Shown: positions 1,655-22,250 of the stretch, piece by piece
Position numbering within the stretch: position 1 is the first letter of the stretch
How the letters are laid out: each line of letters starts with the position of its first letter
Source: Octopus sinensis
Taxonomy: Eukaryota
DNA: 25,604 bases
Assembly: GCF_006345805.1 (NCBI RefSeq)
Contig: NW_021836030.1
Span: 1-25,604 of the forward strand
Direction: 5' to 3'
Position numbers and translations under genes: made by a program
Notes under the pieces: model-generated
The model's input: only the letters and a program-made list of their open reading frames with translations
Database searches by the model: none
Told to the model about the DNA's origin: nothing

Positions 1655-1712
1655 TATTATTATATTTGTTGTTGTTGCTGTTGTTGTTGTTGTTATTATT
1701 TTATATTTATTA

Positions 1713-1753
<41 letters not shown>

Positions 1754-1789
1754 TATTATTATATTATTATTATTATTATTATTATCATC
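1655..1789. repeat. (TTA)n/(TTG)n microsatellite
   Basis: Direct inspection; source of the poly-L/I/Y ORF 1630-1851. Confidence 0.97.
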
Positions 1790-2644
1790 GTCATTTACTT
1801 TTAATCTGCATGTTTGATGCAATCACCTGCCGGGGCACACCCAGCGCCTAGGGCAAGTGAAGGTTAAGAGTTGTTGAAATATAGCTGAAAGCTTGGGGAG
1901 GGGAAGTAGAGAAATATCTCCATGTAATACAAACACAAACATTTACATTGATAGGGTTTTTCTAAGGATGTGGGCAGTACTTGTTAGCACAATCTTTTGG
2001 ATTTCCTTGAGACATGGTTCCAGGGATATTTTCTAGGTGTTTCTGACATCCCTTTTTTATCATACCTAGGGCACCTACAATAACAGGAAACATTTTTGTT
2101 TTAAGATTCCACATCTTTTGTATTTCGATTTCCAGGTCCTTATATTACTAAGATTGTCAAATTCTTTACAGATACATTTTATCAGTGGGGACGCTTACCT
2201 CTATTAGTCTGCAGGTATTTTCTTCCCTGTCTTTAACAATTATGTCTGGTCGATTAGCCTTGATCATTTGTCGGTTGACTGGAAAATCCCAGAGGATGGT
2301 GACATCTTTACCTTCAACAACTGGCTGAGGATGGTGTTCATACCAGTTAGCAGGAGTGTCGGATTTGTAGTGTTTACATATCTTCCAATGTATATACTGT
2401 CCTACCCTATCGTGGCGATTTTTGTATTCGTTTGTGTCAGCACAGGACATCCCGAAACGAGATGGTCTATTGTTTCGTCAAATGTGTCGCAGAATCTGCA
2501 TTTAGGGTCAGTACGTTTCGGAGAACGTTAGCCTGGTAATTCTGGTAAACAAGCTTTGATCTTGTGCTGCCATTATGAAACCTTCAGTCTCTGCTTTCAA
2601 TCCTGAATCTTCAGCCACTGAGGGTTGTTGCTTGGTCTACATCA

Positions 2645-2645
<1 letters not shown>
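1790..2645 (-). mobile_element. R4/Dong-clade LINE 3' fragment D2 (CCHC knuckle, REL endonuclease, 3' UTR, TAA tail)
   Basis: SGLKAETEGFIMAAQDQSL, CRFCDTFDETIDHLVSGC, RHDRVGQYIHWKIC, NRPDIIVKD...IEVSVP, PVIVGALGMIKKG, ILRKTLSM* (stop 1943-1945), then a UTR ending in (TAA)n. Several frameshifts. Confidence 0.93.
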
Positions 2646-2683
<38 letters not shown>

Positions 2684-2768
2684 GTTGTTGTTGTGTTGTT
2701 GTTGTTGTTGTGTTGTGTTGTTGCTGCTGCTGTTGTTGTGTTGTTTAGTTGTTGTTGTATTATTATTA

Positions 2769-2799
<31 letters not shown>

Positions 2800-2882
2800 G
2801 TTATTACTATTATTATTATATTATTATTATATTATTATTATTATTATTATTATTATATTATTATTATTTTATTATTATTTTA
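2646..2882. repeat. (TTA)n/(TTG)n microsatellite
   Basis: Direct inspection. Confidence 0.97.
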
Positions 2883-2884
2883 AA

Positions 2885-3100
2885 TAGGAGGCATGTAGGC
2901 AGAATTGTGAGCAAGCCGTTTAAAAATGCTTAGCGGCATATCTTCTGTTTTTACGTTCTGAGTTCAAATTTCTCCGAGATAGACTTTGCCTTCATCCTTT
3001 CAGGCTCGAGAAGATAGGTACCAGCTGAACACTGGAGTCGATGTATCGACTTAGCCTTTTCAGAAACTGCTGACCTTGTGCCAAAAATTTGAAATCAATA
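2885..3100 (+). mobile_element. tRNA-derived SINE (family A), degenerate
   Basis: A-box-like GGCAGAATTGTGAGC and B-box GAGTTCAAATT; colinear with the copy at 3779-3982 (GACTTTGCCTT-CATCCTTT, GATGTA-TCGACTTA, TGACCTTGT); ends in (ATT)n. Confidence 0.8.
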
Positions 3101-3208
3101 TTATTATTGTGCCCGAAACAGAAATTATTATTACCATTATTAATATTGTTATTATTGTTATTATTAATATTATATATTATTATTATATTATTATTATTAT
3201 TATTATTA

Positions 3209-3243
<35 letters not shown>

Positions 3244-3273
3244 TATATTATTATATTATTATTATTATTAATT
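3101..3273. repeat. (TTA)n microsatellite
   Basis: Direct inspection. Confidence 0.97.
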
Positions 3274-3473
3274 TATGTTTGACTTTTGCTTTATATTTGT
3301 ACAAGTGACACCAAGTCACCCAGAGAGACCTCAAGAGACAACAAGTTAGAGTTCAAGTTGTATTATGCTTAGAGTGCATACATTTGGTTTTGTACCTAGT
3401 ATTGTTCTAGAGAATGCTTAAGAAACATAAGAAAATTGTAATGTTTTTAAAACTTGGGGGTTTCCTGGTATCT
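3274..3473 (-). mobile_element. Probable R4/Dong LINE 3' UTR fragment D3
   Basis: Minus strand starts with an IPGNP-like codon run (compare the IPG near the D2 C-terminus), carries the same 3' stem-loop motif class (GAGGTCTCTCTGGGTGAC) and ends ...AAAGTCAAACATAAATTAATAAT; (TAA)n on both sides. Confidence 0.6.
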
Positions 3474-3564
3474 AATATTATATTATTATTATTATTATTA
3501 TTATATTATTATTATTTATTATTATTATTATTATAATTATTATTATTATTATTATTATTATTAA

Positions 3565-3595
<31 letters not shown>

Positions 3596-3626
3596 GTTAT
3601 TATTAGTATATATAATAATAATAATA

Positions 3627-3667
<41 letters not shown>

Positions 3668-3778
3668 GTTACTATTATTATTATTATAATTATTATTTTA
3701 TTATTATAATTATTATTATTATTATTATTAATATTATTATTATTATATTATTATTATTATTATTTTATTATTATTATT
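3474..3778. repeat. (TTA)n microsatellite with a short inverted (TAA) patch near 3612-3628
   Basis: Direct inspection. Confidence 0.97.
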
Positions 3779-3982
3779 AAGGCGGTGAGCTGCCAGAATT
3801 TTAGCACTCCGGACGAATGTTTAGCGGTATCGTCTGCCGCTACGTTTTTTGAATTCAAATCCGCCGGGGTCGACTTCGCCTTTCATCCTTTCAGATCTAT
3901 AAAATAGGTAAACAGTTACGCATTGGGTTCGATGTAATTGACTTAATCCCGCCCCACCAAAACTGACCTTGTTAGCAAAAAT
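3779..3982 (+). mobile_element. tRNA-derived SINE (family A)
   Basis: Starts AAGGCGGTGAGCTGCCAGAATTTTAGC (A-box-like), B-box-like GAATTCAAATCCG, colinear with 2885-3100, flanked by (TTA)n. Confidence 0.82.
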
Positions 3983-4079
3983 TATTATTATTATTATTAT
4001 TATTATCATTGTTGTTGTTGTTGTTGATGTATTATTATTATTTTATTATTATTATTTCTTATTATTATTTTTTTTTTTT
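3983..4079. repeat. (TTA)n/(TTG)n tract with poly-T (tail of D4)
   Basis: Direct inspection. Confidence 0.9.
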
Positions 4080-4520
4080 CTTCTTTCAAATTTGCTTCCA
4101 TTTTGCCGAGTGTCTTCCGACTCCTAGGGCAAGAGAAACTCATAGTGTACATTGGTAGGCCATAAACTAAACAAATGTCGTTCATTTTTTTAAGTTAAAT
4201 TAAAATACATGAGCAGCAACAGTTCTCACACTCGACAATGCTCTTCTCAATACGTTGATGTACCAGTTAAGACAAATCTTTGCACTTCTTGCAGGGTGGT
4301 AAGCCAGGGATATTCTCATATAATTTTCGGTTCCCTTTGATCATTCCTAGTGCTCCTACGATCACTGGTATTGTATCCGCCTTGAGATGCCACATTTTCT
4401 CATTTCAATGAGTAGGTCTTTATATTTTCTGAGCTTGTCAAACTCTTTCGCTGAGATATTATGATCACAGGGGATGCTCATGTCAATCAATAAGCAAACT
4501 TTATTGTTTTGGTCTTTCAA
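4080..4520 (-). mobile_element. R4/Dong-clade LINE 3' fragment D4 (REL C-terminus plus 3' UTR)
   Basis: LKDQNNKVCLLIDMSIPCDHNISAKEFDKLRKYKDLLIE, then after a frameshift KMWHLKADTIPVIVGALGMIKG; the UTR has TTGCCCTAGG as in D2; A-rich/(TAA)n tail. Confidence 0.9.
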
Positions 4521-4530
4521 ATTATTATTA

Positions 4531-4599
<69 letters not shown>

Positions 4600-4600
4600 A
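4521..4600. repeat. (TTA)n microsatellite
   Basis: Direct inspection. Confidence 0.97.
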
Positions 4601-6814
4601 TTGCCTTTGCACAGTTTCTAACACTGGAGATGTACTATAGTGTCAGCTGTTCACTACCAGTGAACTAAGGTAACACCTCTTATTTTTTGTGCACCTTCCG
4701 GAATATTTGAGGGATTCCAAGCAGTGGTCTTTCTGCAAGTGCTCCACCCTTATTGCAGCCCCAATTTCTTCCACGTACTTCTCGAGATTTTTGCTCACTG
4801 TTCCCAGGGCACCGACAGTTATTGGTACTACCGCTACCTTTTTCATCGACCTCAACTGCTTAACTTCCCAAGCTAACCTGTAACATATCTCGACTTTTCT
4901 TTCTACCTTATCGCATATCTCTTTGTCAGCTGGGCATGCTATGTCTATGATCCAGCATAGCTTGTTTTCTTTCCTAATTAAGACTATGGCCGGCTTCCTA
5001 TTCTAAATATCATGGTCGCTCTGAATCATAAAATCCTATCGGATCTTTATATTTCTATTTTCGACGATGCCTTCAGGTTTCTGGTCGTACCAATTTTTTG
5101 CTCTGTCAAGTCCATACTTGTTGCAAAGTGTCCAACGGACAAGCCTGGCTACATTGTCGTGGCGTCTCTTATAATCCTTCTGGGCTAATGGCGTACATTG
5201 GCTGGTAATATGCCATACGGTTTCACCGTTTTGTCCACAGATTCTGCACTTATAACTTTCTGATGTGTTGTCTATTCTGTATTTTATATAGTTTGTTCTT
5301 AGTGCTTGCTTGTGAGCAGCACAGATTAGAGCCTCAGTTTCCGGTTTTAAATCCCTTTTAGTCATCCACAGCCATCTTTTTTCTCTGTCTGTCTTATCTT
5401 CAACATCCCTATGAAATTGTCCATGCATTCTTTTATTTACCCATATATTTTCAGTTTTATTCATTTTCAATTTCTTGTACAATGCTTTATCTTTGCAATC
5501 TTTCATCCTATACAAGCCTAAGCTTTTACTTCTAATAACTGCGGTTCTGTGGCATTTTTTACATACCATGCTATGCTGTTTTCTTCTGCTCTAATGCTGT
5601 ACTCGCATCCAATAAGTCCTCTTGCTCCTTCTTTTTCTTGGTACATACAGTCTGCCTGTGTCACTTTTTGGGTGGAGTCACCCATATCTTTGTCTTTCTG
5701 TCTATGCTGTTTAATTCGCCTATAGTCCATGCGATTACTCCTGCTCCATATCTAAAGAGTGAAACCGTCCAGGTGTTGATAGCTTTGATCTTATTCTGTT
5801 CCTTTAATTTCGACTTTTGGATAAGTCTCAGTCTGTGCAAGTGCTCCACCTTAAGTTTCTCTCTCGTTTCTTTCTCCATCAATTTATTCATTTCCAAAAT
5901 CCTCAAGTATTTATAGCCCGTCTCTTCTATCTGCATCATAACCTCTCCCGACGATATCGTTAGCTCGTCCATACATTTTGATTTTGCCTCTCTTCAAGAT
6001 CAGCATTCCACACTTTCTCAGTCCGAACTCGATTCTGTTATCAGCACTGAAAGTATACACCGTATCAACGAAGGAACTGACTTGGGCTTCATCTTTACCA
6101 TAAAATTTGAGGTCATCCATGAATACCAAATGGTTGATTTTTTGTTGGCGGCGTTTGAACACATATTCAGCTTTCGATTTCCTCAGAATCAGAGTTAGTG
6201 GTATCAAGTAAAGTACAAATATCAGTGGTGACAGGCAGTTCCCTTGGAAGATGCCCCTCCTAATTTCTACTCTCCCTAAACTTCTGTATGCTTCTTCCGT
6301 CCTCCAATTCGCCATACTTTTTCCATGCAATCGCTCAACATTCGATTCAATACCAAATAGCTTCATACACTCCATAATCCAAGAATGTGGGATCATATCG
6401 TACGCCTTACGATAGTCGATCCATGACGTGGCTAAGTTACATTTCCTCCTCTTGCAGTCTTTAAATGCAGGGTTGTCTATCAGGAGTTGATCCTTGGTAC
6501 CTCTGTACTTAGGCATGCAAACCTTCTGCTTATGTGGTAGGAATCCATTTTTTCCTAAATGTTCGTACATTGACTCTGCGAGTATTCCAGTCAATAATTT
6601 CCACATAAGTGGCAAACAGGATATCGGCCTGTAATTGTCTACTGTATTGCTTTTTCGATGTTTTTCAAGCACAGCACTGTCCTACCCAATGTCAACCACA
6701 CTGGTGTTGCTTGGTCTGCATTTAACAAGGTGTTGAGTTGCGCAGCTATTCGGGCATGACATTCACCAAATCTTTTGACCCAGTAGATTTGAACTCAACT
6801 GGTCCCGGGGCCTT
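4601..6814 (-). mobile_element. R4/Dong-clade LINE D5 (RT through REL and 3' UTR), different subfamily from D1/D2/D4, degenerate
   Basis: [107 protein letters not shown] (catalytic D replaced by A), IDIACP, VPITVGALG; multiple frameshifts. Confidence 0.95.
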
Positions 6815-9110
6815 GCTTGGAAGGGGAATGGGTCGACGATGGTACTGGACTTTAGCTCGTACATGGGCGGCTTGCCATGAATCTCAGTAGCTGACGCTAG
6901 GTTATGTGAAAGGTCGATAACAGTCGCTGAAATTCGGGAGGCTAAGAGCGATTGCACTCGATTTGGATGGTCTGCCCGACGAACTCTATGTATTCATGCG
7001 ACTAGCAGCAGAATGGGAGAATTCTTAGTGCAGTTAGCAGAGATGTGATGACACTGCTGAGGAAGGACGCCGACAAAGGGGGCGTACTAAATAATCTTTT
7101 GTCCATAACTCTGCTAAATACCGAGTTTAAGATTTTGTCCAAGATGTTAGCGAAAAGGTTGGCGCATGTCGTCGGTAGTGTGGTCGGAGAAGCACAAACG
7201 TGCGCAGTCCCGAGCAGGTTTGTCTACAACAACTTCCACCCTATGTGATACATCATAGAGAGGGCTGGGACCACAATTGGCTTCCAGGACGCTCTGATCC
7301 ATTTGGATCAATCATAAAGCATTTGATAGAGTAGACCATCACTACTTGGAAGCCGTCCTGAAAGCACGCGGTTTCGGACCAGTTTTCAGAGACTGGACCG
7401 CTGCATTGCACAGCGGCACCTGTTCAGTGGTCAAAATAAAGGCCACTTATCGGAGCCATTTGGTATCACACGCTCGGTCCATCAGGGCTGCCCGCGGTTG
7501 CCTCTTCTATACGTATTGGCACTCGAACCACTGTGGAGGACCCTGGAACAGTTAAGTGGCATCCCTTTCGAACTGGGACAAAGAAGGGCAGTGTCCCCAT
7601 AGGTGGACGATGTCACCGTCATGGTATCGGACTCCTCCGAAGCAGAGACGATCGGCACCATCCTAAAGGAATATGAGTCAGCTGCAGGGGTTAAAATCAA
7701 CGCTGACAAATCGGTTAGTTTGCTGTTGGACTCCTGGGGAGGCTGTACGATGCCATCGTACGGCTTCAGCGGACGCTGGACCGACGGACGAGTTAAAGTG
7801 CTCGGGGTCTGGTTTGGTTCCGACCTTCAAGTTGATAAGAACTAGGACGAGGTGGCGAACAGCGTTGCCAGTCTTACCTAGAAATGGGCTGAGAGGAAGC
7901 TGTCCCTGAAAAGTCGGGCAGTGGTGGCGAATGATTACATCGCCTCCATTATCATTTATCGCCTGACCGTTGTGCATTATCCCGGTAACTGCTTGACCAT
8001 GTTGGAACGTCTCTTATTTAAATTCTTGTGGAAGGGACTCGTTCAAATGGTCAGGCGATCAATCCATTGCTAGCATCCTCTGAGTGGCGGATTAGGTATG
8101 CTGTGGCTCCCAATGCAAAGACCCACGCTTAGGTTACACCACCTGCAGCGATTTCTGGACGGTAGGCGTGTGTGGGCTCCGTTTGTGAAGCTCGTCTTTC
8201 CGCAGCTCGTCTCCTTGACGGAACTGCGGTCCTGGGTGAAGAAAAGACCGTCTGGAACCTAGAATGTCGTTAGGTGGTCACAGCCCTCTTTCAGTCGGGC
8301 AATGGGATCGGTCGATGTACCGATTTACACATTTATAGGAGATTAGTAGTGGGGGAAGTGCGACGACGTTCTCGGGGAGACTCTGGACGCCGACGAGAAC
8401 GAACTGATAAATCTGTTCCGGAGGACTTCCAGTCGGGAACTATTATGGATAATTTCCAGATGCCCTTGGCCTGGCAGTGCTAACGGGGAGCGCTACTGGT
8501 TCGAGATAACCTCTACATGTTCGGAGGTGCTGTCAGACGGACTTGTCCGAGGTGGCGCAGAGTGACGAAACCATTCTTCACGCACTCGTTCAGTGTCCGG
8601 GCATTGTTGTCTTCTGGGATTATGTTGAACAGCTACGGCCACATGTGGGGCGGATCCGTCTGTCGGTCTGTAGTAATGATTGCGGCGCCGCCCTCCTTCA
8701 ATCGGGCAGGCAGGGCAGTTTTCCTTTACTTGGTGGCTGTGGCGAAAGAGGTTGTTTGATGGACGAGGCTGAAAAGCATGAGGACAGACATATTCCAGAC
8801 ATATTGACTTTTTCAAGTTTCCCCTGAAAAAGAAATTGCGAATGGAGAGAGAAATGCTGTCGTGGAATGAGTTTATTGAAAAGTGGGAGAAAGGTGCGAA
8901 AATGGCAACAGTTGATGGCAGGCCTGAGAGTCGGAGACAAGGAATTGGCGAGGGCACTTGGTCTTGGTGTTTCAGAGAAATCTCAGACAGTGGGGTTCCT
9001 CGATCATTCCTAGAGGCGTTCCTGTATCAGGAGGGACACATCTCTATCATCATCCTCGATGCATATGTCCCTAAGCAGCAGCGGCACTTTGTTACCCTAA
9101 GTTCGCTATT
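6815..9110 (+). mobile_element. L1/Tx1-clade LINE copy A (RT, zf-RVT region, partial 3' UTR), heavily decayed, 5'-truncated
   Basis: LDGLPDELY, TLLNTEFKILSKMLAKRL, QTCAVPSR, AFDRVDH, HQGCP..PLLYVLALEP, *VDDVTV (YADD site has a stop at 7600-7602), KINADKS, LAWQC, TCPR..QSDETILHALVQC; colinear with copy B. The 3' boundary is approximate. Confidence 0.92.
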
Positions 9111-13084: not shown

Positions 13085-13480
13085 GTGATCCGCAGTAATC
13101 GATATCTAACAGCTAATGAACCGCTGTAACAGAATCAGTGAACCACGGAACTATTCTATATTGATACACAGAACTGCAGTAGTCGATATACATTAACCAA
13201 TGATCCAATCTAATCGATATACAATAACCACTGGTCCACTCAATCAATATACAATAACCACTGAACTGCTGTAATCAATATACAATTGAGCCAATGTAAT
13301 CGATATGCAATAACCAGTAAACCACAGTAATCAATATACTGTAACTACTGATCCACAGTAATCGATGTACAGTCTTCACCGATCCATTGTAATCGATACA
13401 CAAATAAATCGTCAATAGCTGTAATCAATATACAGCAACCTGTAAACAACTCGTATCAATGTACGGTAAGAACTGAATTA
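13085..13480. repeat. Degenerate minisatellite, unit about 31 bp (GTAATCGATATACAATAACCACTGATCCACA-like), roughly a dozen copies
   Basis: Recurrent GTAATC(G/A)ATATACA core at about 30-32 bp spacing. Confidence 0.85.
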
Positions 13481-16078: not shown

Positions 16079-16605
16079 GTCGGTTACAAAAGTAGGTGTG
16101 TACTTTGCAGGAAAAGGAGATCTTCGTCGTTCAAGGATGAAGAATTAGTTATACGGCATACTGAATTACCTTCTCCTAAACTTGAAAGTGGTTGACTATT
16201 CCTTAAACACGTGTAACTTAAGGTAATTCGTGAGGAGATTCAACGTGACACGGCGTGTGAGAAGTCTGTACTCTTTTTAATTACGTTCATATATACATAC
16301 ATTCAATCACACATGCGTTCATACAGGTACACGCTCACGCACACACATATATGCATATATATATATATATATATAATTGATGCACTTGTCGTGAACGACA
16401 AACGACGGTTCAGTAAAATGAAGCGTTAATAGTGTTCTGTGAACAGAAATATGTCTCTTTCGGCAAATGGAACAAGTTGAGCATTCAGTTTGCTGAGTGC
16501 TTGCAGATCATTTCCTATGTGTTCTGTTAAGTAGATGGCAAGACCGAAACAAAAAATTATAGTTTATGCGTCTCGAATCAAACCGATAGAAATCTCTAAA
16601 AAATT

Positions 16606-16676
16606 CGTTATTACCGTATTGGTCCAATTTCGGGGTTAATTCATAAGAAATTTCCCCATCTTCAGCGGCAAATACG
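16606..16676 (-). ncRNA. Type I hammerhead ribozyme (left copy)
   Basis: Minus strand: CGUAUUUGCCG-CUGAAGA-U-GGGG(AAAUUUCUUAUGAAUUAA)CCCC-GAAA-UUGGACCAAU-A/CGGUAAUAACG. Stem I UUGCCG/CGGUAA plus CGU/ACG beyond a 2x2 loop; stem II GGGG/CCCC; stem III AUUG/CAAU; predicted cleavage after AUA between 16617 and 16616; extra U after A9. Confidence 0.85.
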
Positions 16677-17184
16677 CCAGATATAAATGAAATACTTACT
16701 CATACCCATGGAAAAAGCAAGCACTAAGCCCCAAATATATCCAAAATAGAAAAATCTTCGGCGCACCTCGAGACACGTTTGATTCGAACTAGAAACTTTC
16801 ACAGAGTGATAGAATCCGGAAGTGAACAGTAATCTATTTATTATTAATATAGGATAAAATTTTTTTCGGGAAAAAATTTTTATCAATGGCCAGCATATCA
16901 AAAAATGCGTTTAAAGGTAAACTTTATACATAATTTACAAGATAAGGGCAGAAGAAAAATTCTGATGCCAAATATGCCGAAACAAAAAATCTTATCCTAT
17001 ATTAATTATAAATAGATTAGTGTTCACTTCCGGATTCTATCACCCTGTGAAAGTTTCTAGTTCGAATCACACGTGTCTCGAGGTGCGCCGAATATTTTTC
17101 CATTTTGGATATATTTGGGGTACTTAAATCTGCTCAGGGCTTGCTTTTTCCATGGGTATGAGTAAGTATTTCATTTATATCTCG

Positions 17185-17255
17185 CGTATATGCCGCTGAA
17201 GAGGGGGAAATTTCTTATGAATTAACCCCGAAATTGGACCAATACGGTAATAACG
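17185..17255 (+). ncRNA. Type I hammerhead ribozyme (right copy)
   Basis: Core CUGAAGA 17196-17202; stem II G-run 17203-17207 with CCCC 17226-17229; GAAA 17230-17233; stem III AUUG(GAC)CAAU 17233-17243; cleavage triplet AUA 17242-17244; stem I UGCCG 17191-17195 with CGGUA 17245-17249, extended by CGU/ACG. All canonical core nucleotides are present. Confidence 0.9.
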
Positions 17256-17427
17256 AATTTTTTAGAGATTTCTATCGGTTTGTTTCGAGACGCATAAATT
17301 ATAATGGTCATCAACAATTCTGCCCTTATCTTGTAAATTATGTATAAATTTTACCTTTAAAGGCATTTTTGATATGCTGGCCATTGATAAAATGTTTTTC
17401 CCGAAAGAAATTTTATCCTGTATTAAT

Positions 17428-18039
17428 TATATATATATATATAAAACTCAACTTGTGTGTCTGTGTGTGTATCTGTCTGTGTGTCTGTGTGTTTAACTTC
17501 CCCAGCACATCTCCTCCTAGCTATTAAATGGTAGAACCACCAAAAATGGGTCACTTAAAGTTTAGACGAATGAAAATTGAACTGCGCTATTTCTGTTCCG
17601 AAATTCTTCTCGCAAGTGCAAAAATCGATAATGTGTTTGTTTAGGCCTTATCCCATGCATTGAATAATGAACTTTACTCAGTCAGCTGTTTGACGTGAAC
17701 TGTGTTCACCACGCGTGCAAGCATGCGTAAATTGCATGAAAAATATTAAAAAAAAAAAGATGTAAAAACGAATCGCCGTAAACATTGTAGAAATTCGGCA
17801 AAGAAATGAATTTTCGGGATGTAGCCAGAAGGGTTTCTTCGTATTAATCGTTTGGACTTTGTGAACACATACCAATTGTTTTCATAACATTTTTAACACT
17901 TTGAATTAAATGTGACCATTTTGCGTTGAGTCTGCAGTTTGAATCAATTTAACCAAATTTTAGCAGGCCGGATTTTTGATCATCACGATACATCGCCAGC
18001 GACTCCCTGAAACTCTCCCATGAAATCCTTGTTGAGAAA
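17428..18039 (+). mobile_element. Non-autonomous Helitron-like segment H1 (5' head plus interior, no 3' terminus)
   Basis: Head TATATATAAAACTCAACTTGTGTGTCTGTGTG... is nearly identical over about 60 bp to 18042-18105; same TATATAAA plus GT/GTCT microsatellite layout as H3; no hairpin-CTAG end. Confidence 0.55.
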
Positions 18040-18105
18040 TCTATATTTATAAAACTCAACTTGTGTGTCTGTGTGTGTATCTGTGTGTGTGTCGTGTGTT
18101 TAACT
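18040..18105 (+). mobile_element. Helitron-like 5' head H2 (truncated)
   Basis: A|TCTATATTTATAAAACTCAACTTGTGTGTCTGTG..., a direct repeat of the H1 head 608 bp upstream. Confidence 0.6.
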
Positions 18106-18156
18106 TTTGGATCTACCAAGTTTCATTATTAAGGATGGAAAGTAGTGTGTAGCAAA

Positions 18157-18555
18157 TCTATATATATAAAGCTGAAGTTGTCTGTGTGTAGCAGGTTTGG
18201 TAGCCTTCAACTAACACTATCTCCTTCGAGACCCTGCAGCGCAAGTTGACCAAAATCGAGAGTATGATAGAAGAAGGTTTGCTCTTCATTCTGTTGAAGA
18301 TAAAATTCAAATCGGATCATGTTAATACCAAAAATTATTTACATCAAAAAGGTGCTTTTTTCTATGAAAATCCCTATTTTTTACGATTTTTGACTGGTGT
18401 GTCACCATTTTTCGGTGTATTTCAACTGGTAAAATGTTCACTTGAAGAGAATAACAAGTTGCATAATGCAAAATTTTTACTTTTCAAAAATTCCAATTCT
18501 AAAAGGTCGAAACAAACCCAAGCAACACCGGGTGCAACACCGGGTGATACTGCTA

Positions 18556-20330: not shown

Positions 20331-21900
20331 TGTTTATTTATTAGCCACACAGGGCTGCACACAGACGGGACAGATTACAAAGTAGAGCTTTTCTTTTTGG
20401 GGAGAGAAAAAAAAGGGTGGGTTAGGTTTTCGATCAAAAGGGATTGTAAAAGGGAAAGAAGAAAAGAAAAAAAAGGGAAAAACGATCAATAGGGATCGTG
20501 TATCACAGTATCATGGTGTAAAGTGTAAAGGGAGAAGCAGATAAGGTTTATCCGCAGGAAGAAAAGCCTACGGAAAAGACCACGGTAACCTCGGTCAATG
20601 ATGTTACATGTTACCACACTTGTTTGCAAGTGGGTAACCCTCTGTTTCCAATTTCCGGGTTCATAGGATTATGCTCAAGGTGGCTTCGTCATTCAAACGT
20701 GCCATCCTTGCTACATTCACCCATCTTTTTTTTAAACATTCGCTAGACAAATCTTGCCTCTCTACTCTCACTTTCCTTTTCAAGTGGTACTTGAAGAAGT
20801 TGATGAGAGATTGACCAGAGAGGAAAGTGTTTGTCTCCAATCCTTTCAGACGCGTCCACCAGACACATTCTTTCGCCATAGCCACAAGGATGATGAAGAT
20901 AGCTCTTCCTTCCCGTTTGAAGGAAGGAGGCGTGACAATAGTGACGATAGACTCGGCTGCTGATAAACCGACACGTCCCACACGTGACAGCAGTCGTTCG
21001 ACATAAGCCCACAGGTCGGAAATTGTTGGACACTGCACGAGTGCGTGCAGAACGGTTTCGTCGCTCTGCTCGCATCTCGGGCAGGACGGACCCGTGTTTC
21101 TGGAGCCGTGTCTGTAGAGCTTATTCCGAACGGGTAGCGCTTCTCGGTAGCACTGCCAGGCCAAGGATCTCTGGAAGATGTCCATCTGCCCTGGCCCGAA
21201 AGTCGTCCTGAACAGGCGGGTCAGGTATTTCTCGTCGACGCCCAGTTTCACCCCAAGCTCGTCATCGTACCTCCCCTCCACTAATCCCCTATCGAATGCT
21301 TTGGTTGTGTTGAAGTCACTCAAGGTCGACCCGGGACGGCATAGTTACTTGAGAACAACGCGACATTCGCAGTGCCATTCGCCCTTCCTTTCCAAAAAAA
21401 GCGAAAGAGAATGCGTTCTAGTTTGGTGATGGTAGGGTTGGGACAAGGCACGACGGTCAGGCGGTAGTAGATGACGGACGCGATGTACGAGTTCGCCACC
21501 TCCGCCCGACCTTTTAGGGACAGTTTCCTCTCGGATCATTGCCGGGCGAGAGTGACCACTCTACTCGTTATCTCTTTCCAGTTTTTCTCCATTTGGAGGT
21601 CCGGACCAAACCAGACCCCGAGCAACTCGACCAGACCGTCGGTCCAGCGTCCCACGACGGATGTGCTGGTGTACGGCATGGGCTTGCTTCTCCAGGTGCC
21701 GAGTCGCAATCTCACTGATTTTTCCTGGTTGATTTTCGCTCCTGTCACCGCCTCGTAGTTTTCAGTGTCTCGCCGACCAGCTCGATATGCTCGTGGCTAG
21801 ACACTATGACGGTGACGTCATCCGCGTATGCAGACACGCTCGTCCCGCATCCAAATTCTCGCGATATGCCCCTCAAATTTGCCAACTTCTGCAATAATGG
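20331..21900 (-). mobile_element. L1/Tx1-clade LINE copy B (RT YADD to C-terminus, full 3' UTR), 5'-truncated, internal deletion
   Basis: SVSAYADDVTVIV, GAKINQEKSV, LLGVWFGPDLQMEKNW, FQRSLAWQCYREALPVR, CPRCEQSDETVLHALVQC; stop at 20661; T-rich UTR with AATAAA then (TATC)n. Lacks about 220 bp present in copy A (about 8035-8255). Confidence 0.95.
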
Positions 21901-22185: not shown

Positions 22186-22250
22186 TTTATTGGGTGCAAC
22201 ACATGTTTCGACCCTCTCTGCGTCTCAATAAAAATCTCATTAGATATTCT
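22186..22250 (-). mobile_element. Possible Penelope pseudo-LTR end with decayed minimal hammerhead
   Basis: Minus strand: CTAATGAG...GGTCGAAACATGT..(9 nt)..AATAAA. The CTGATGAG/CGAAACATGT/AATAAA order is typical of PLE pLTRs, but the core and stems are mutated. Confidence 0.45.

What the first reader, a model, noticed from the sequence alone, without database searches (positions are those of the whole stretch)
16606..17255. Two complete type I hammerhead ribozymes, one on each strand, inside a 750-bp palindrome
Seen: + strand 17185-17255 has the full hammerhead core (CUGAAGA, GAAA, AUA cleavage triplet), and all three helices can form. Stem I is UGCCG/CGGUA plus an internal loop and a distal CGU/ACG; stem II is GGGG/CCCC with an extendable AAUU helix; stem III is AUUG/CAAU. 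The minus strand has the same motif at 16606-16676, with an extra U instead of G after A9 and a slightly better stem I. The 71-nt motif differs at only about 2 positions between arms, while the arms also differ by a ~14-bp indel elsewhere. Established: type I hammerheads occur in metazoan retrozymes and Penelope pLTRs; a single extra nucleotide after A9 is tolerated in a natural viroid hammerhead; palindromic stem III sequences (here AUUGG-A-CCAAU) can support dimeric double-hammerhead folding. Inference: this is a self-cleaving RNA module that cuts transcripts from either direction. No ORF or repeat class in the track explains it.
Basis: partly seen in the sequence, partly recalled or inferred. 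Interest (0 to 1): 0.93.

Follow-up and report, generated by a model that had tools for sequence, protein, structure and literature searches.

The report
Inverted pair of hammerhead-bearing retroelement copies
Two copies of one short, non-coding, ~410-420-base mobile repeat lie head to head in what looks like an animal genome, and each carries a complete hammerhead self-cleaving RNA motif of the kind already described in Penelope-like retroelements and animal "retrozymes"; this is a good catch but a known kind of thing.

Summary
A complete type I hammerhead motif lies at 17191-17249 (+) and again at 16671-16611 (-), inside a 750-bp imperfect inverted repeat (16556-17305).

A motif this good turns up about 0.001 times per shuffled window. 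No Rfam hammerhead model matches it, a model I built from three validated animal retrozyme hammerheads scores it only 5.5 bits, and I could find no relatives elsewhere. So there is no covariation evidence and no evidence of activity.

The palindrome is not a purpose-built two-way module. It is two copies of one repeat unit of about 410-420 nt (34% GC):
- **Minus copy:** unit length, 16558-16976, flanked by an exact 14-nt direct repeat that looks like a target-site duplication.
- **Plus copy:** about 1.1 units, 16977-17438, with a head-to-tail junction, ending in a (TA)n microsatellite.

The motif's build fits published Penelope-like-element hammerheads. It has a long helix II, a short helix I, an unpaired base after A9 and a small palindromic helix III that favours a dimer. 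Those hammerheads were also reported as pairs on opposite strands 100-700 bp apart.

A transcript crossing both arms would fold into a hairpin of about -500 kcal/mol that buries the ribozyme.

Verdict: a new member of a known kind, probably a dead insertion. Interest is modest.

The parts
16544..16557 (.). Left copy of the exact 14-nt direct repeat CCGAAACAAAAAAT; putative target-site duplication of the minus copy
   Evidence: it is one of only four non-simple exact direct repeats of 14 nt or more at 100-1000 nt spacing in the whole window. It abuts the 3' end of the minus copy.
16558..16976 (-). Minus-strand copy of the repeat unit (419 nt, about one unit plus roughly 13 nt of possible terminal redundancy)
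   Evidence: Searches give the alignment to the plus copy: 13 mismatches in 314 columns for 16869->16556, and 4 in 88 for 16953->16870 against 17318-17404. Its 5' end (16992->16958) aligns weakly to the unit's tail and junction (3 of 300 shuffles do as well).
16611..16671 (-). Hammerhead motif of the minus copy. Helix I UUGCCG/CGGUAA, core CUGAAGA, unpaired U, helix II GGGG/CCCC extended by AAUUU/GAAUU, then GAAA, helix III AUUG(GAC)CAAU, H17 = A. Predicted cut between 16617 and 16616. The distal helix I pairs CGU/ACG extend it to 16606-16676.
16977..16990 (.). Right copy of the 14-nt direct repeat; it is also the first 14 nt of the plus copy
16977..17305 (+). Plus-strand copy, first unit, truncated at its 5' end (it lacks the 87-nt segment that precedes this point in the minus copy)
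17191..17249 (+). Hammerhead motif of the plus copy. Helix I UGCCG/CGGUA, core CUGAAGA, five Gs against four Cs in helix II, GAAA, helix III AUUG(GAC)CAAU, H17 = A. Predicted cut between 17244 and 17245. With the distal helix I it extends to 17185-17255.
17306..17438 (+). Head-to-tail junction (12 nt, 17306-17317) and the first 121 nt of a second tandem unit, which breaks off in a (TA)n microsatellite before reaching its hammerhead
   Evidence: 17318-17438 is the reverse complement of 16832-16953 at 92%, and 17405-17438 repeats 16984-17017 at 85%. This sets the unit length at about 421 nt.
16346..16376 (.). (TA)n microsatellite about 180 nt to the left of the element; context only
17425..17443 (.). 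(TA)n microsatellite at which the plus copy ends

Best explanation
The locus is a relic of a short, non-coding, hammerhead-bearing retroelement of the Penelope-like-element (PLE) world. Most likely this is an animal 'non-LTR retrozyme', that is, a non-autonomous derivative of a PLE flanking repeat (pLTR).

Shown:
- One repeat unit of about 410-420 nt (34% GC) is present as a 1.1-unit copy on the + strand, with a head-to-tail junction, ending in (TA)n.
- A unit-length copy on the - strand sits exactly at the plus copy's 5' edge, flanked by a 14-nt direct repeat.
- Each copy carries one complete type I hammerhead motif, on the same strand of the unit.
- The two copies are circular permutations of each other. 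Their ends differ and neither coincides with the hammerhead cut site.

Inferred life cycle of the family, by analogy with published work:
1. Tandem copies elsewhere in the genome are transcribed.
2. Two neighbouring hammerheads pair through the near-palindromic helix III (AUUGGACCAAU) into a double hammerhead and cut after AUA.
3. The monomer is circularised by a host RNA ligase.
4. A PLE reverse transcriptase/endonuclease copies the circular or multimeric RNA into new sites. This produces copies longer than one unit or permuted, with target-site duplications, often next to microsatellites and often with an adjacent inverted copy.

This particular locus has only one hammerhead per strand and forms a long hairpin if read through. 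It is therefore most likely an inactive insertion, and the palindrome is a by-product of how or where the copies inserted.
For: Motif:
- It is complete and rare by chance: 0.001 per shuffled window.
- All 69 metagenome stretches that share the same core and helix III by chance lack comparable helices I and II.
- It satisfies the strict core rule CUGANGA/GAAAY/RUH used for animal hammerheads (PMC7229834 supplement).
- Its helices are as good as those of three in-vitro-validated retrozyme hammerheads run through the same descriptor.

Build: it matches the published description of metazoan PLE hammerheads (PMC4209133).
- Larger helix II: here 4 + 5 bp.
- Short helix I: 5-6 bp.
- A small palindromic helix III that favours dimers. 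The double hammerhead is the minimum-energy fold of two copies.
- That paper also reports pairs on opposite strands about 100-700 bp apart, attributed to truncated PLEs.

Natural precedents: AUA as the cut triplet, an extra base after A9, and a long helix II interrupted by internal loops all occur in natural hammerheads (PMC1636495).

Element:
- Unit of about 421 nt with a head-to-tail junction.
- 34% GC.
- 14-nt TSD-like repeat exactly at both ends of the minus copy.
- A (TA)n microsatellite at the plus copy's end.
- These fit the descriptions of non-LTR retrozymes (150-450 bp units, under 50% GC, TSDs longer than 4 bp; PMC7229834).
- They also fit PLE insertions (partial tandems, an inverted 5'-truncated copy adjacent at the 5' end, microsatellite bias; PMC8557442).
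- Retrozymes have been proposed to be non-autonomous PLE derivatives (bioRxiv 10.64898/2026.07.22.740005).

The arms differ by 4% plus indels and are permuted, which argues against an assembly fold-back artefact.
Against: - No Rfam hammerhead model matches, at gathering score or at E <= 10, even on 91-nt slices.
- A covariance model built from three validated retrozyme hammerheads aligns the motif in the correct register but scores only 5.5 bits. That is not significant at window scale.
- There are only two copies, so there is no covariation. Conservation of the motif (1 difference in 59) is not distinguishable from the rest of the arm (12 in 255, p = 0.47).
- No relatives turned up in any collection or in the protein database.
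- The hammerhead fold is not the minimum-energy fold of the monomer (-13.8/-13.0 against -15.2/-16.2 kcal/mol).
- The reconstructed circular monomer is not more structured than control pieces of the window (z -1.6 and -2.9).
- Among the ORFs of at least 90 aa in the window, the eight I scanned against Pfam showed no PLE reverse transcriptase or GIY-YIG endonuclease, only LINE-type remnants.
- There is no tandem pair of hammerheads on one strand at this locus.
- Chance motifs of this quality are expected at tens per gigabase.
Confidence: 0.7

Rival explanations
1. The two arms are the 3' terminal pieces (pLTR fragments) of heavily 5'-truncated autonomous Penelope-like elements in the classic inverted-plus-direct arrangement. 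On this reading they are not a short non-autonomous retrozyme.
For: PLE insertions are typically 5'-truncated, form partial tandems and often carry an inverted truncated copy at the 5' end. Their hammerheads lie in the pLTRs near the 3' end (PMC8557442; PMC4209133). The build of the hammerhead here is the PLE type.
Against: The head-to-tail junction at 17305/17318 is followed, after only 87 nt, by sequence that also lies about 330 nt upstream of the unit's end. The repeating unit is therefore about 421 nt, not several kilobases. The minus copy is unit length with its own 14-nt flanking repeat. No PLE ORF was found nearby.
Confidence: 0.15
2. The hammerhead-like motif is a chance match inside an unrelated inverted duplication or fold-back repeat. 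It has never been a ribozyme.
For: - No Rfam hit.
- 5.5 bits with a model built from validated retrozyme hammerheads.
- No covariation is possible with two copies.
- Early relaxed hammerhead searches gave mostly false positives (PMC6155905).
Against: - The motif would have to fall by chance inside a ~420-nt, AT-rich unit with a tandem junction, a TSD-like repeat and an inverted neighbour. Scaling the rate gives about 1.6e-5 per unit, both strands.
- It would also have to show, by chance, the specific PLE-type features: an unpaired base after A9, a long helix II and a near-palindromic helix III that makes the double hammerhead the minimum-energy dimer.
Confidence: 0.1
3. The palindrome is a functional unit in its own right. 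Either it is a two-way self-cleaving module, or it is a hairpin-RNA locus that yields small RNAs against the repeat family.
For: The arms are 95-96% complementary over about 310 nt. A read-through RNA folds to about -500 kcal/mol, which is the kind of substrate small-RNA pathways use. A hammerhead faces outward on each strand.
Against: - The same hairpin buries the sense hammerhead in read-through transcripts of either direction.
- The structure is fully explained by two insertions, or one complex insertion, of the same unit, including a 14-nt flanking repeat around one copy only.
- The arms have drifted apart by 4% plus indels with no sign of constraint.
- There is no expression data.
Confidence: 0.04

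Closest known systems
Hammerhead motifs of metazoan Penelope-like elements (Cervera & de la Pena 2014, PMC4209133)
   Same: - Type I topology with a strict core.
- Larger helix II and shorter helix I.
[quoted passage not shown]
- A small palindromic helix III that implies dimeric action.
- Widespread single motifs, and pairs on opposite strands 100-700 bp apart.
   Different: - Helix III here can form 4 bp with a 3-nt loop, more than in the 'minimal' variants.
- Helix II is split by a GA/AA internal loop.
- No PLE ORF was found nearby, and the repeating unit is only about 420 nt.
Animal non-LTR retrozymes (coral, mussel, axolotl; Cervera & de la Pena 2020, PMC7229834)
   Same: - A unit of a few hundred nucleotides (the published range is 150-450 bp), low GC and no ORF.
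- One type I hammerhead per unit with a palindromic helix III.
- A head-to-tail junction and a flanking repeat longer than 4 bp.
- Copies permuted as expected from circular or multimeric RNA templates.
   Different: - Only about 1.1 units per strand and one hammerhead per strand, so this locus cannot release a monomer or make a circle.
- There is no sequence similarity to the published hammerheads (5.5 bits with a model built from them).
- Helix II is much longer than the canonical 4 bp plus loop.
- The predicted circular RNA is not conspicuously rod-like.
Double-hammerhead self-cleavage of newt satellite 2 transcripts and of a viroid with an unstable helix III (reviewed in PMC6155905)
   Same: Helix III is weak as a monomer. 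Two copies pair into an extended helix III, and that fold is predicted here as the minimum-energy dimer.
   Different: Those cases have tandem copies on one RNA. Here the second copy is on the other strand, so a dimer could form only in trans or in tandem arrays elsewhere in the genome.
Complex tandem/inverted insertions of Penelope-like elements (Craig et al. 2021, PMC8557442)
   Same: An inverted copy lies immediately next to the 5' end of a partial tandem, and the insertion sits next to (TA)n/(CA)n microsatellites.
   Different: The 14-nt direct repeat surrounds only the inverted copy, which suggests a separate insertion event. No 30-40-bp 'tail' was recognised.

Membership tests
Hammerhead ribozyme (class) | Conserved core: C3 U4 G5 A6 N7 G8 A9, G12 A13 A14, A15.1-U16.1 pair, H17 not G | tested here: met
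   Both copies read CUGAAGA ... GAAA ... U-A(H17). They also satisfy the stricter CUGANGA/GAAAY/RUH rule.
Hammerhead ribozyme (class) | Three helices around the core, with helix I open (type I) | tested here: met
   Helix I is 5-6 bp plus a distal 3 bp. Helix II is 4 + 5 bp. Helix III is 4 bp with a 3-nt loop. The fold lies 1.4-3.2 kcal/mol above the monomer's minimum-energy fold.
Hammerhead ribozyme (class) | Site-specific, Mg2+-dependent self-cleavage 3' of H17 | not testable with these tools
   Needs in vitro transcription of monomer and tandem-dimer constructs.
Hammerhead ribozyme (class) | Core and pairings conserved, with compensatory changes, across homologues | tested here: inconclusive
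   Only two copies exist. There is 1 difference in 59 inside the motif against 12 in 255 outside (p = 0.47). No homologues were found.
Rfam hammerhead families (release 15) | Covariance-model score at or above the gathering threshold | tested here: not met
   No hammerhead match at gathering score, nor at E <= 10 on 1.1 kb or on 91-nt slices. This is a detection criterion for canonical sequences, not a definition of the class.
PLE-type hammerhead (PMC4209133) | Larger helix II, shorter helix I, an unpaired base at the 5' end of stem II, and helix III absent or small and palindromic | tested here: met
   Helix II is 4 + 5 bp and helix I 5-6 bp. U (minus copy) or G (plus copy) follows A9. Helix III AUUGGACCAAU is palindromic except for the central A, and a dimeric fold is predicted.
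PLE-type hammerhead (PMC4209133) | Located in the flanking repeats (pLTRs) of an element encoding RT and a GIY-YIG endonuclease | tested here: not met
   No ORF lies between or beside the copies. Among the ORFs of at least 90 aa in the window, the eight scanned against Pfam gave only LINE-type RVT_1 and zf-RVT hits. The paper itself attributes most genomic motifs to truncated copies without an ORF. The rest of the genome could not be searched.
Animal non-LTR retrozyme (PMC7229834) | Non-coding unit of 150-450 bp, under 50% GC, carrying one type I hammerhead | tested here: met
   Unit of about 410-421 nt at 34% GC, with no ORF that has homologues.
Animal non-LTR retrozyme (PMC7229834) | Head-to-tail tandem array with at least two hammerheads on the same strand | tested here: not met
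   One head-to-tail junction is present (17305/17318), but the second unit stops at 17438 before its hammerhead. There is one hammerhead per strand.
Animal non-LTR retrozyme (PMC7229834) | Target-site duplications, when present, longer than 4 bp | tested here: met
   An exact 14-nt direct repeat lies at both ends of the minus copy.
Animal non-LTR retrozyme (PMC7229834) | [quoted passage not shown] | tested here: inconclusive
   Expression cannot be tested. The reconstructed circular monomers fold to -93.8 and -93.3 kcal/mol (z -1.6 and -2.9), no better than control pieces of the window.

The most novel reading that the evidence does not exclude
The locus may preserve a direct footprint of integration templated by circular RNA.
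- The unit-length minus copy has an exact 14-nt target-site duplication.
- Its ends, like those of the 1.1-unit plus copy, lie at different points of the unit, and neither lies at the hammerhead cut site.
- If many such permuted, TSD-flanked single-unit insertions exist in the source genome, they would give genomic proof that animal retrozymes are reverse-transcribed from circles or multimers rather than from cleaved linear monomers.
- The head-to-head pairs would then form hairpin loci that could feed small-RNA silencing of the family.
- The hammerhead would also define a new family in which an internal loop of a long helix II takes the place of loop 2.
Probability: 0.2. Interest if true: 0.45.

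Novelty: new member of a known kind. Interest (0 to 1): 0.27.

Why it matters
If real, this adds an unannotated hammerhead/retrozyme family to an animal-like genome. It also illustrates two practical points. First, PLE-type hammerheads escape the Rfam models. Second, hammerheads that appear on both strands can simply be two inverted copies of one element. The TSD-flanked, permuted single-unit copy is a small piece of evidence on how these elements integrate. It does not open a new question: hammerheads in Penelope-like elements and animal retrozymes, their dimeric action and their opposite-strand pairs have been described since 2014-2020.

Tried and rejected
- **Rfam release 15.** I searched the whole window at gathering score, 1.1 kb at E <= 10 and two 91-nt slices. 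There was no hammerhead match. The only notable hit, MIR8562 (55 bits against a gathering score of 211), just reflects the long AT-rich hairpin and is rejected.
- **Own covariance model.** I built it from three in-vitro-validated retrozyme hammerheads taken from the PMC7229834 supplement. The candidate aligns in register but scores 5.5 bits, below nine chance hits in the window. The model is too sequence-specific to decide. A fourth sequence (Ax330) was dropped because MAFFT misaligned it.
- **Same-genome or related copies.** Exact look-ups of two window ORFs found nothing. The 79-aa spurious ORF inside the element has no homologue.
- **DNA pattern scans.** A strict pattern found nothing in metagenome, viral or prokaryotic genome collections. 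A loose pattern gave 69 metagenome hits, none of which forms helices I and II comparable to the candidate; several fall in what looks like protein-coding sequence.
- **Literature search for the motif's letters.** It returned only unrelated papers.
- **Organism identification.** The LINE-like RT has relatives at only about 60% identity, one named from an octocoral. The taxon is left as unknown, animal-like.
- **Rod-like circular RNA test.** Not distinguishable from control pieces of the window.
- **Conservation of the motif against the flanks between the two arms.** No statistical power.
- **Homology of the outer flanks (16377-16555, beyond 17439) to the unit.** None.
- **Six-frame Pfam scan around the element.** I relied on ORF lists instead.
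- **Assembly fold-back artefact.** Rejected, because the arms are permuted and 4% diverged with indels.

Full report
**What is there**

The window looks like animal nuclear DNA. It is 38.5% G+C, has many microsatellites, decayed LINE-type reverse-transcriptase ORFs and no tRNA genes.

Arms 16556-16729/17132-17305 are 96% complementary and arms 16729-16865/16984-17120 are 95%. Over the whole 750 bp, identity is 84.6% once indels are counted.

The hammerhead core CTGAAGA...GAAA occurs at 17196-17233 (+) and 16628-16665 (-). I wrote a descriptor that requires the core, the A15.1-U16.1 pair, a non-G at position 17 and all three helices. It finds exactly these two sites in the window:

| Copy | Coordinates | Helix I | Helix II | Helix III | After A9 |
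|---|---|---|---|---|---|
| Plus | 17191-17249 | 5 bp | 4 bp | 4 bp, 3-nt loop | five Gs against four Cs, so no insertion is strictly needed |
| Minus | 16671-16611 | 6 bp | 4 bp | 4 bp, 3-nt loop | an extra U |

- Helix II can be extended by five more pairs beyond a GA/AA internal loop.
- Helix I can be extended by a distal CGU/ACG.
- The predicted cut sites, after 17244 (+) and after 16617 (-), are in register.
- The same descriptor recovers three of four in-vitro-validated animal retrozyme hammerheads, whose helices are no better than these (sequences from the PMC7229834 supplement).

**Is it more than chance?**

In 2000 dinucleotide-preserving shuffles of the window, a motif at least this good occurred 0.001 times per window, and a looser one 0.0105 times.

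A scan of the metagenome collection gave 69 stretches that share the same core and the same helix III by chance. None of them has comparable helices I and II.

So the motif is rare. At about 0.04 per megabase, though, chance examples must exist in any large genome, and the two occurrences here count as one event.

**Negative results**

- No Rfam hammerhead family matches, at gathering score or at E <= 10, even on 91-nt slices.
- A covariance model built only from three validated retrozyme hammerheads aligns the candidate in the correct register but gives 5.5 bits, which is not significant at window scale.
- The hammerhead fold lies 1.4-3.2 kcal/mol above the minimum-energy fold of the monomer.
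- The two arms give no statistical evidence of extra conservation: 1 difference in 59 inside the motif against 12 in 255 outside, p = 0.47.
- I found no relatives anywhere, so covariation could not be tested.

**Anatomy of the palindrome**

The palindrome is two copies of one repeat unit, not a symmetrical device.

- The segment 16832-16953, in the centre, is the reverse complement of 17318-17438, to the right of the right arm (92%).
- The segment 17405-17438 repeats 16984-17017.

Read on the + strand, there is a 5'-truncated unit (16977-17305), a 12-nt junction, and then the first 121 nt of a second unit. That second unit breaks off in a (TA)n run at 17438, before its hammerhead. This head-to-tail junction sets the unit at about 421 nt.

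Read on the - strand, there is one unit-length copy. Its first nucleotides (16992->16958) align weakly with the unit's tail and junction (3 of 300 shuffles do as well). That suggests slightly more than one turn of the unit.

This minus copy (16558-16976, 419 nt) is bounded by an exact 14-nt direct repeat, CCGAAACAAAAAAT, at 16544-16557 and 16977-16990. Only four non-simple exact direct repeats of 14 nt or more at 100-1000 nt spacing exist in the whole window, and two of the others belong to other repeats. I read it as a target-site duplication.

The outer flanks show no homology to the unit. The arms differ by 13 mismatches in 314 columns plus 15 gap columns. Together with the permutation, that rules out a fold-back assembly artefact.

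The two copies end at different points of the unit, and neither end is at the hammerhead cut site. This is what copying from a circular or multimeric RNA would give.

**Comparison with what is known**

Cervera & de la Pena (2014, PMC4209133) describe the hammerheads of metazoan Penelope-like elements as follows:
- a larger helix II;
[quoted passage not shown] - helix III absent or small and palindromic, and therefore selected to work as dimers with low activity in vitro.

They also report pairs of such motifs about 100-700 bp apart on opposite strands, which they attribute to truncated elements. The candidate fits every point.

Craig et al. (2021, PMC8557442) describe PLE insertions as 5'-truncated partial tandems, often with an inverted truncated copy adjacent at the 5' end, and biased towards (TA)n and (CA)n microsatellites.

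Cervera & de la Pena (2020, PMC7229834) define animal non-LTR retrozymes as non-coding tandem units of 150-450 bp, under 50% GC, each with a type I hammerhead, and with target-site duplications longer than 4 bp.

AUA as the cut triplet, an extra base after A9, and a long helix II interrupted by internal loops all have natural precedents (PMC1636495).

**How it most likely works**

Folding supports dimeric action. Helix III alone is unstable as a monomer (0.0 kcal/mol) but gives -10.9 as a dimer. Two 71-mers cofold into a double hammerhead as their minimum-energy structure (-40.1 against 2 x -15.2 kcal/mol).

The family would therefore cleave in tandem transcripts made elsewhere in the genome, be circularised by a host ligase, and be copied back into DNA by a PLE enzyme. 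These steps are inferred by analogy and are not shown here.

At this locus there is one hammerhead per strand. In a transcript that crosses the palindrome in either direction, the antisense arm is made first, and the sense hammerhead is completely paired to it in a hairpin of -502 or -509 kcal/mol. The locus is most likely a dead insertion. The idea of a module that cuts transcripts from either direction is not supported.

**Membership**

The class-defining sequence and pairing features of a hammerhead are met. Activity and covariation are untested.

The PLE-type build is met, but a PLE ORF is absent here. The retrozyme unit features and the TSD are met, but a same-strand tandem pair of hammerheads is not. 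I therefore describe it as a relic copy of a PLE-type or retrozyme-type element, not as an active retrozyme.

**Verdict**

- Observation: confirmed.
- Novelty: a new member of a known kind.
- Confidence in the main explanation: about 0.7. The rivals are truncated autonomous PLE (0.15), a chance motif (0.1), and a functional palindrome (0.04).
- Interest: modest, 0.27.

Noticed in passing
window 17440-17476 and 18048-18084 (wider: 17431-17499 and 18039-18106); third weak copy 18156-18210: A different repeat, TATAAAACTCAACTTGTGTGTC...GTGTGTTTAACTT, starts right at the (TA)n where the plus copy ends. It recurs 608 bp downstream (37 nt exact, 69 nt at 94%), with a degenerate third copy. It may be the 5' end of another element family, or a local duplication that could supply an 'empty site' for the right flank.
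   Followed up: partly
window 5036-6672 (-), 20661-21323 (-), 8543-8827 (+), 2166-2450 (-): Decayed LINE-type retrotransposon remnants. These are RVT_1 and zf-RVT domains split over several frames. The best database relatives are only about 60% identical (one named from the octocoral Paramuricea clavata), so the source genome and its close relatives seem absent from the protein collection.
   Followed up: partly
window 1666-4602: Nearly 3 kb dominated by trinucleotide microsatellites, (ATT)n/(TAT)n/(TTG)n, in blocks of up to about 100 copies.
   Followed up: no
window 13179-13403: A 31-nt tandem repeat, 7.5 copies at 71% matches, of unknown nature.
   Followed up: no
window 22198-22227 (-): A sub-threshold match (10.3 bits, E 0.41) of my retrozyme-hammerhead model. 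It shows a short helix II, GAAAC and a palindromic ACAUGUGU, but the 5' core reads UUAUUGA and no helix I can form. It is either chance or a decayed hammerhead of another family.
   Followed up: partly
window 16779-17070 (-): The Rfam model MIR8562 scores 55 bits (gathering score 211, E 7e-9) on the centre of the palindrome. The match is to the long AT-rich hairpin shape only and is not evidence of a microRNA gene.
   Followed up: yes
window 16320-16384 and 17419-17483: The microsatellites on the two sides of the region mirror each other: (CA)n(TA)n on the left and (TA)n(TG)n on the right, 71% complementary. This may be coincidence of simple sequence, or a hint that the inverted structure once extended further.
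   Followed up: no
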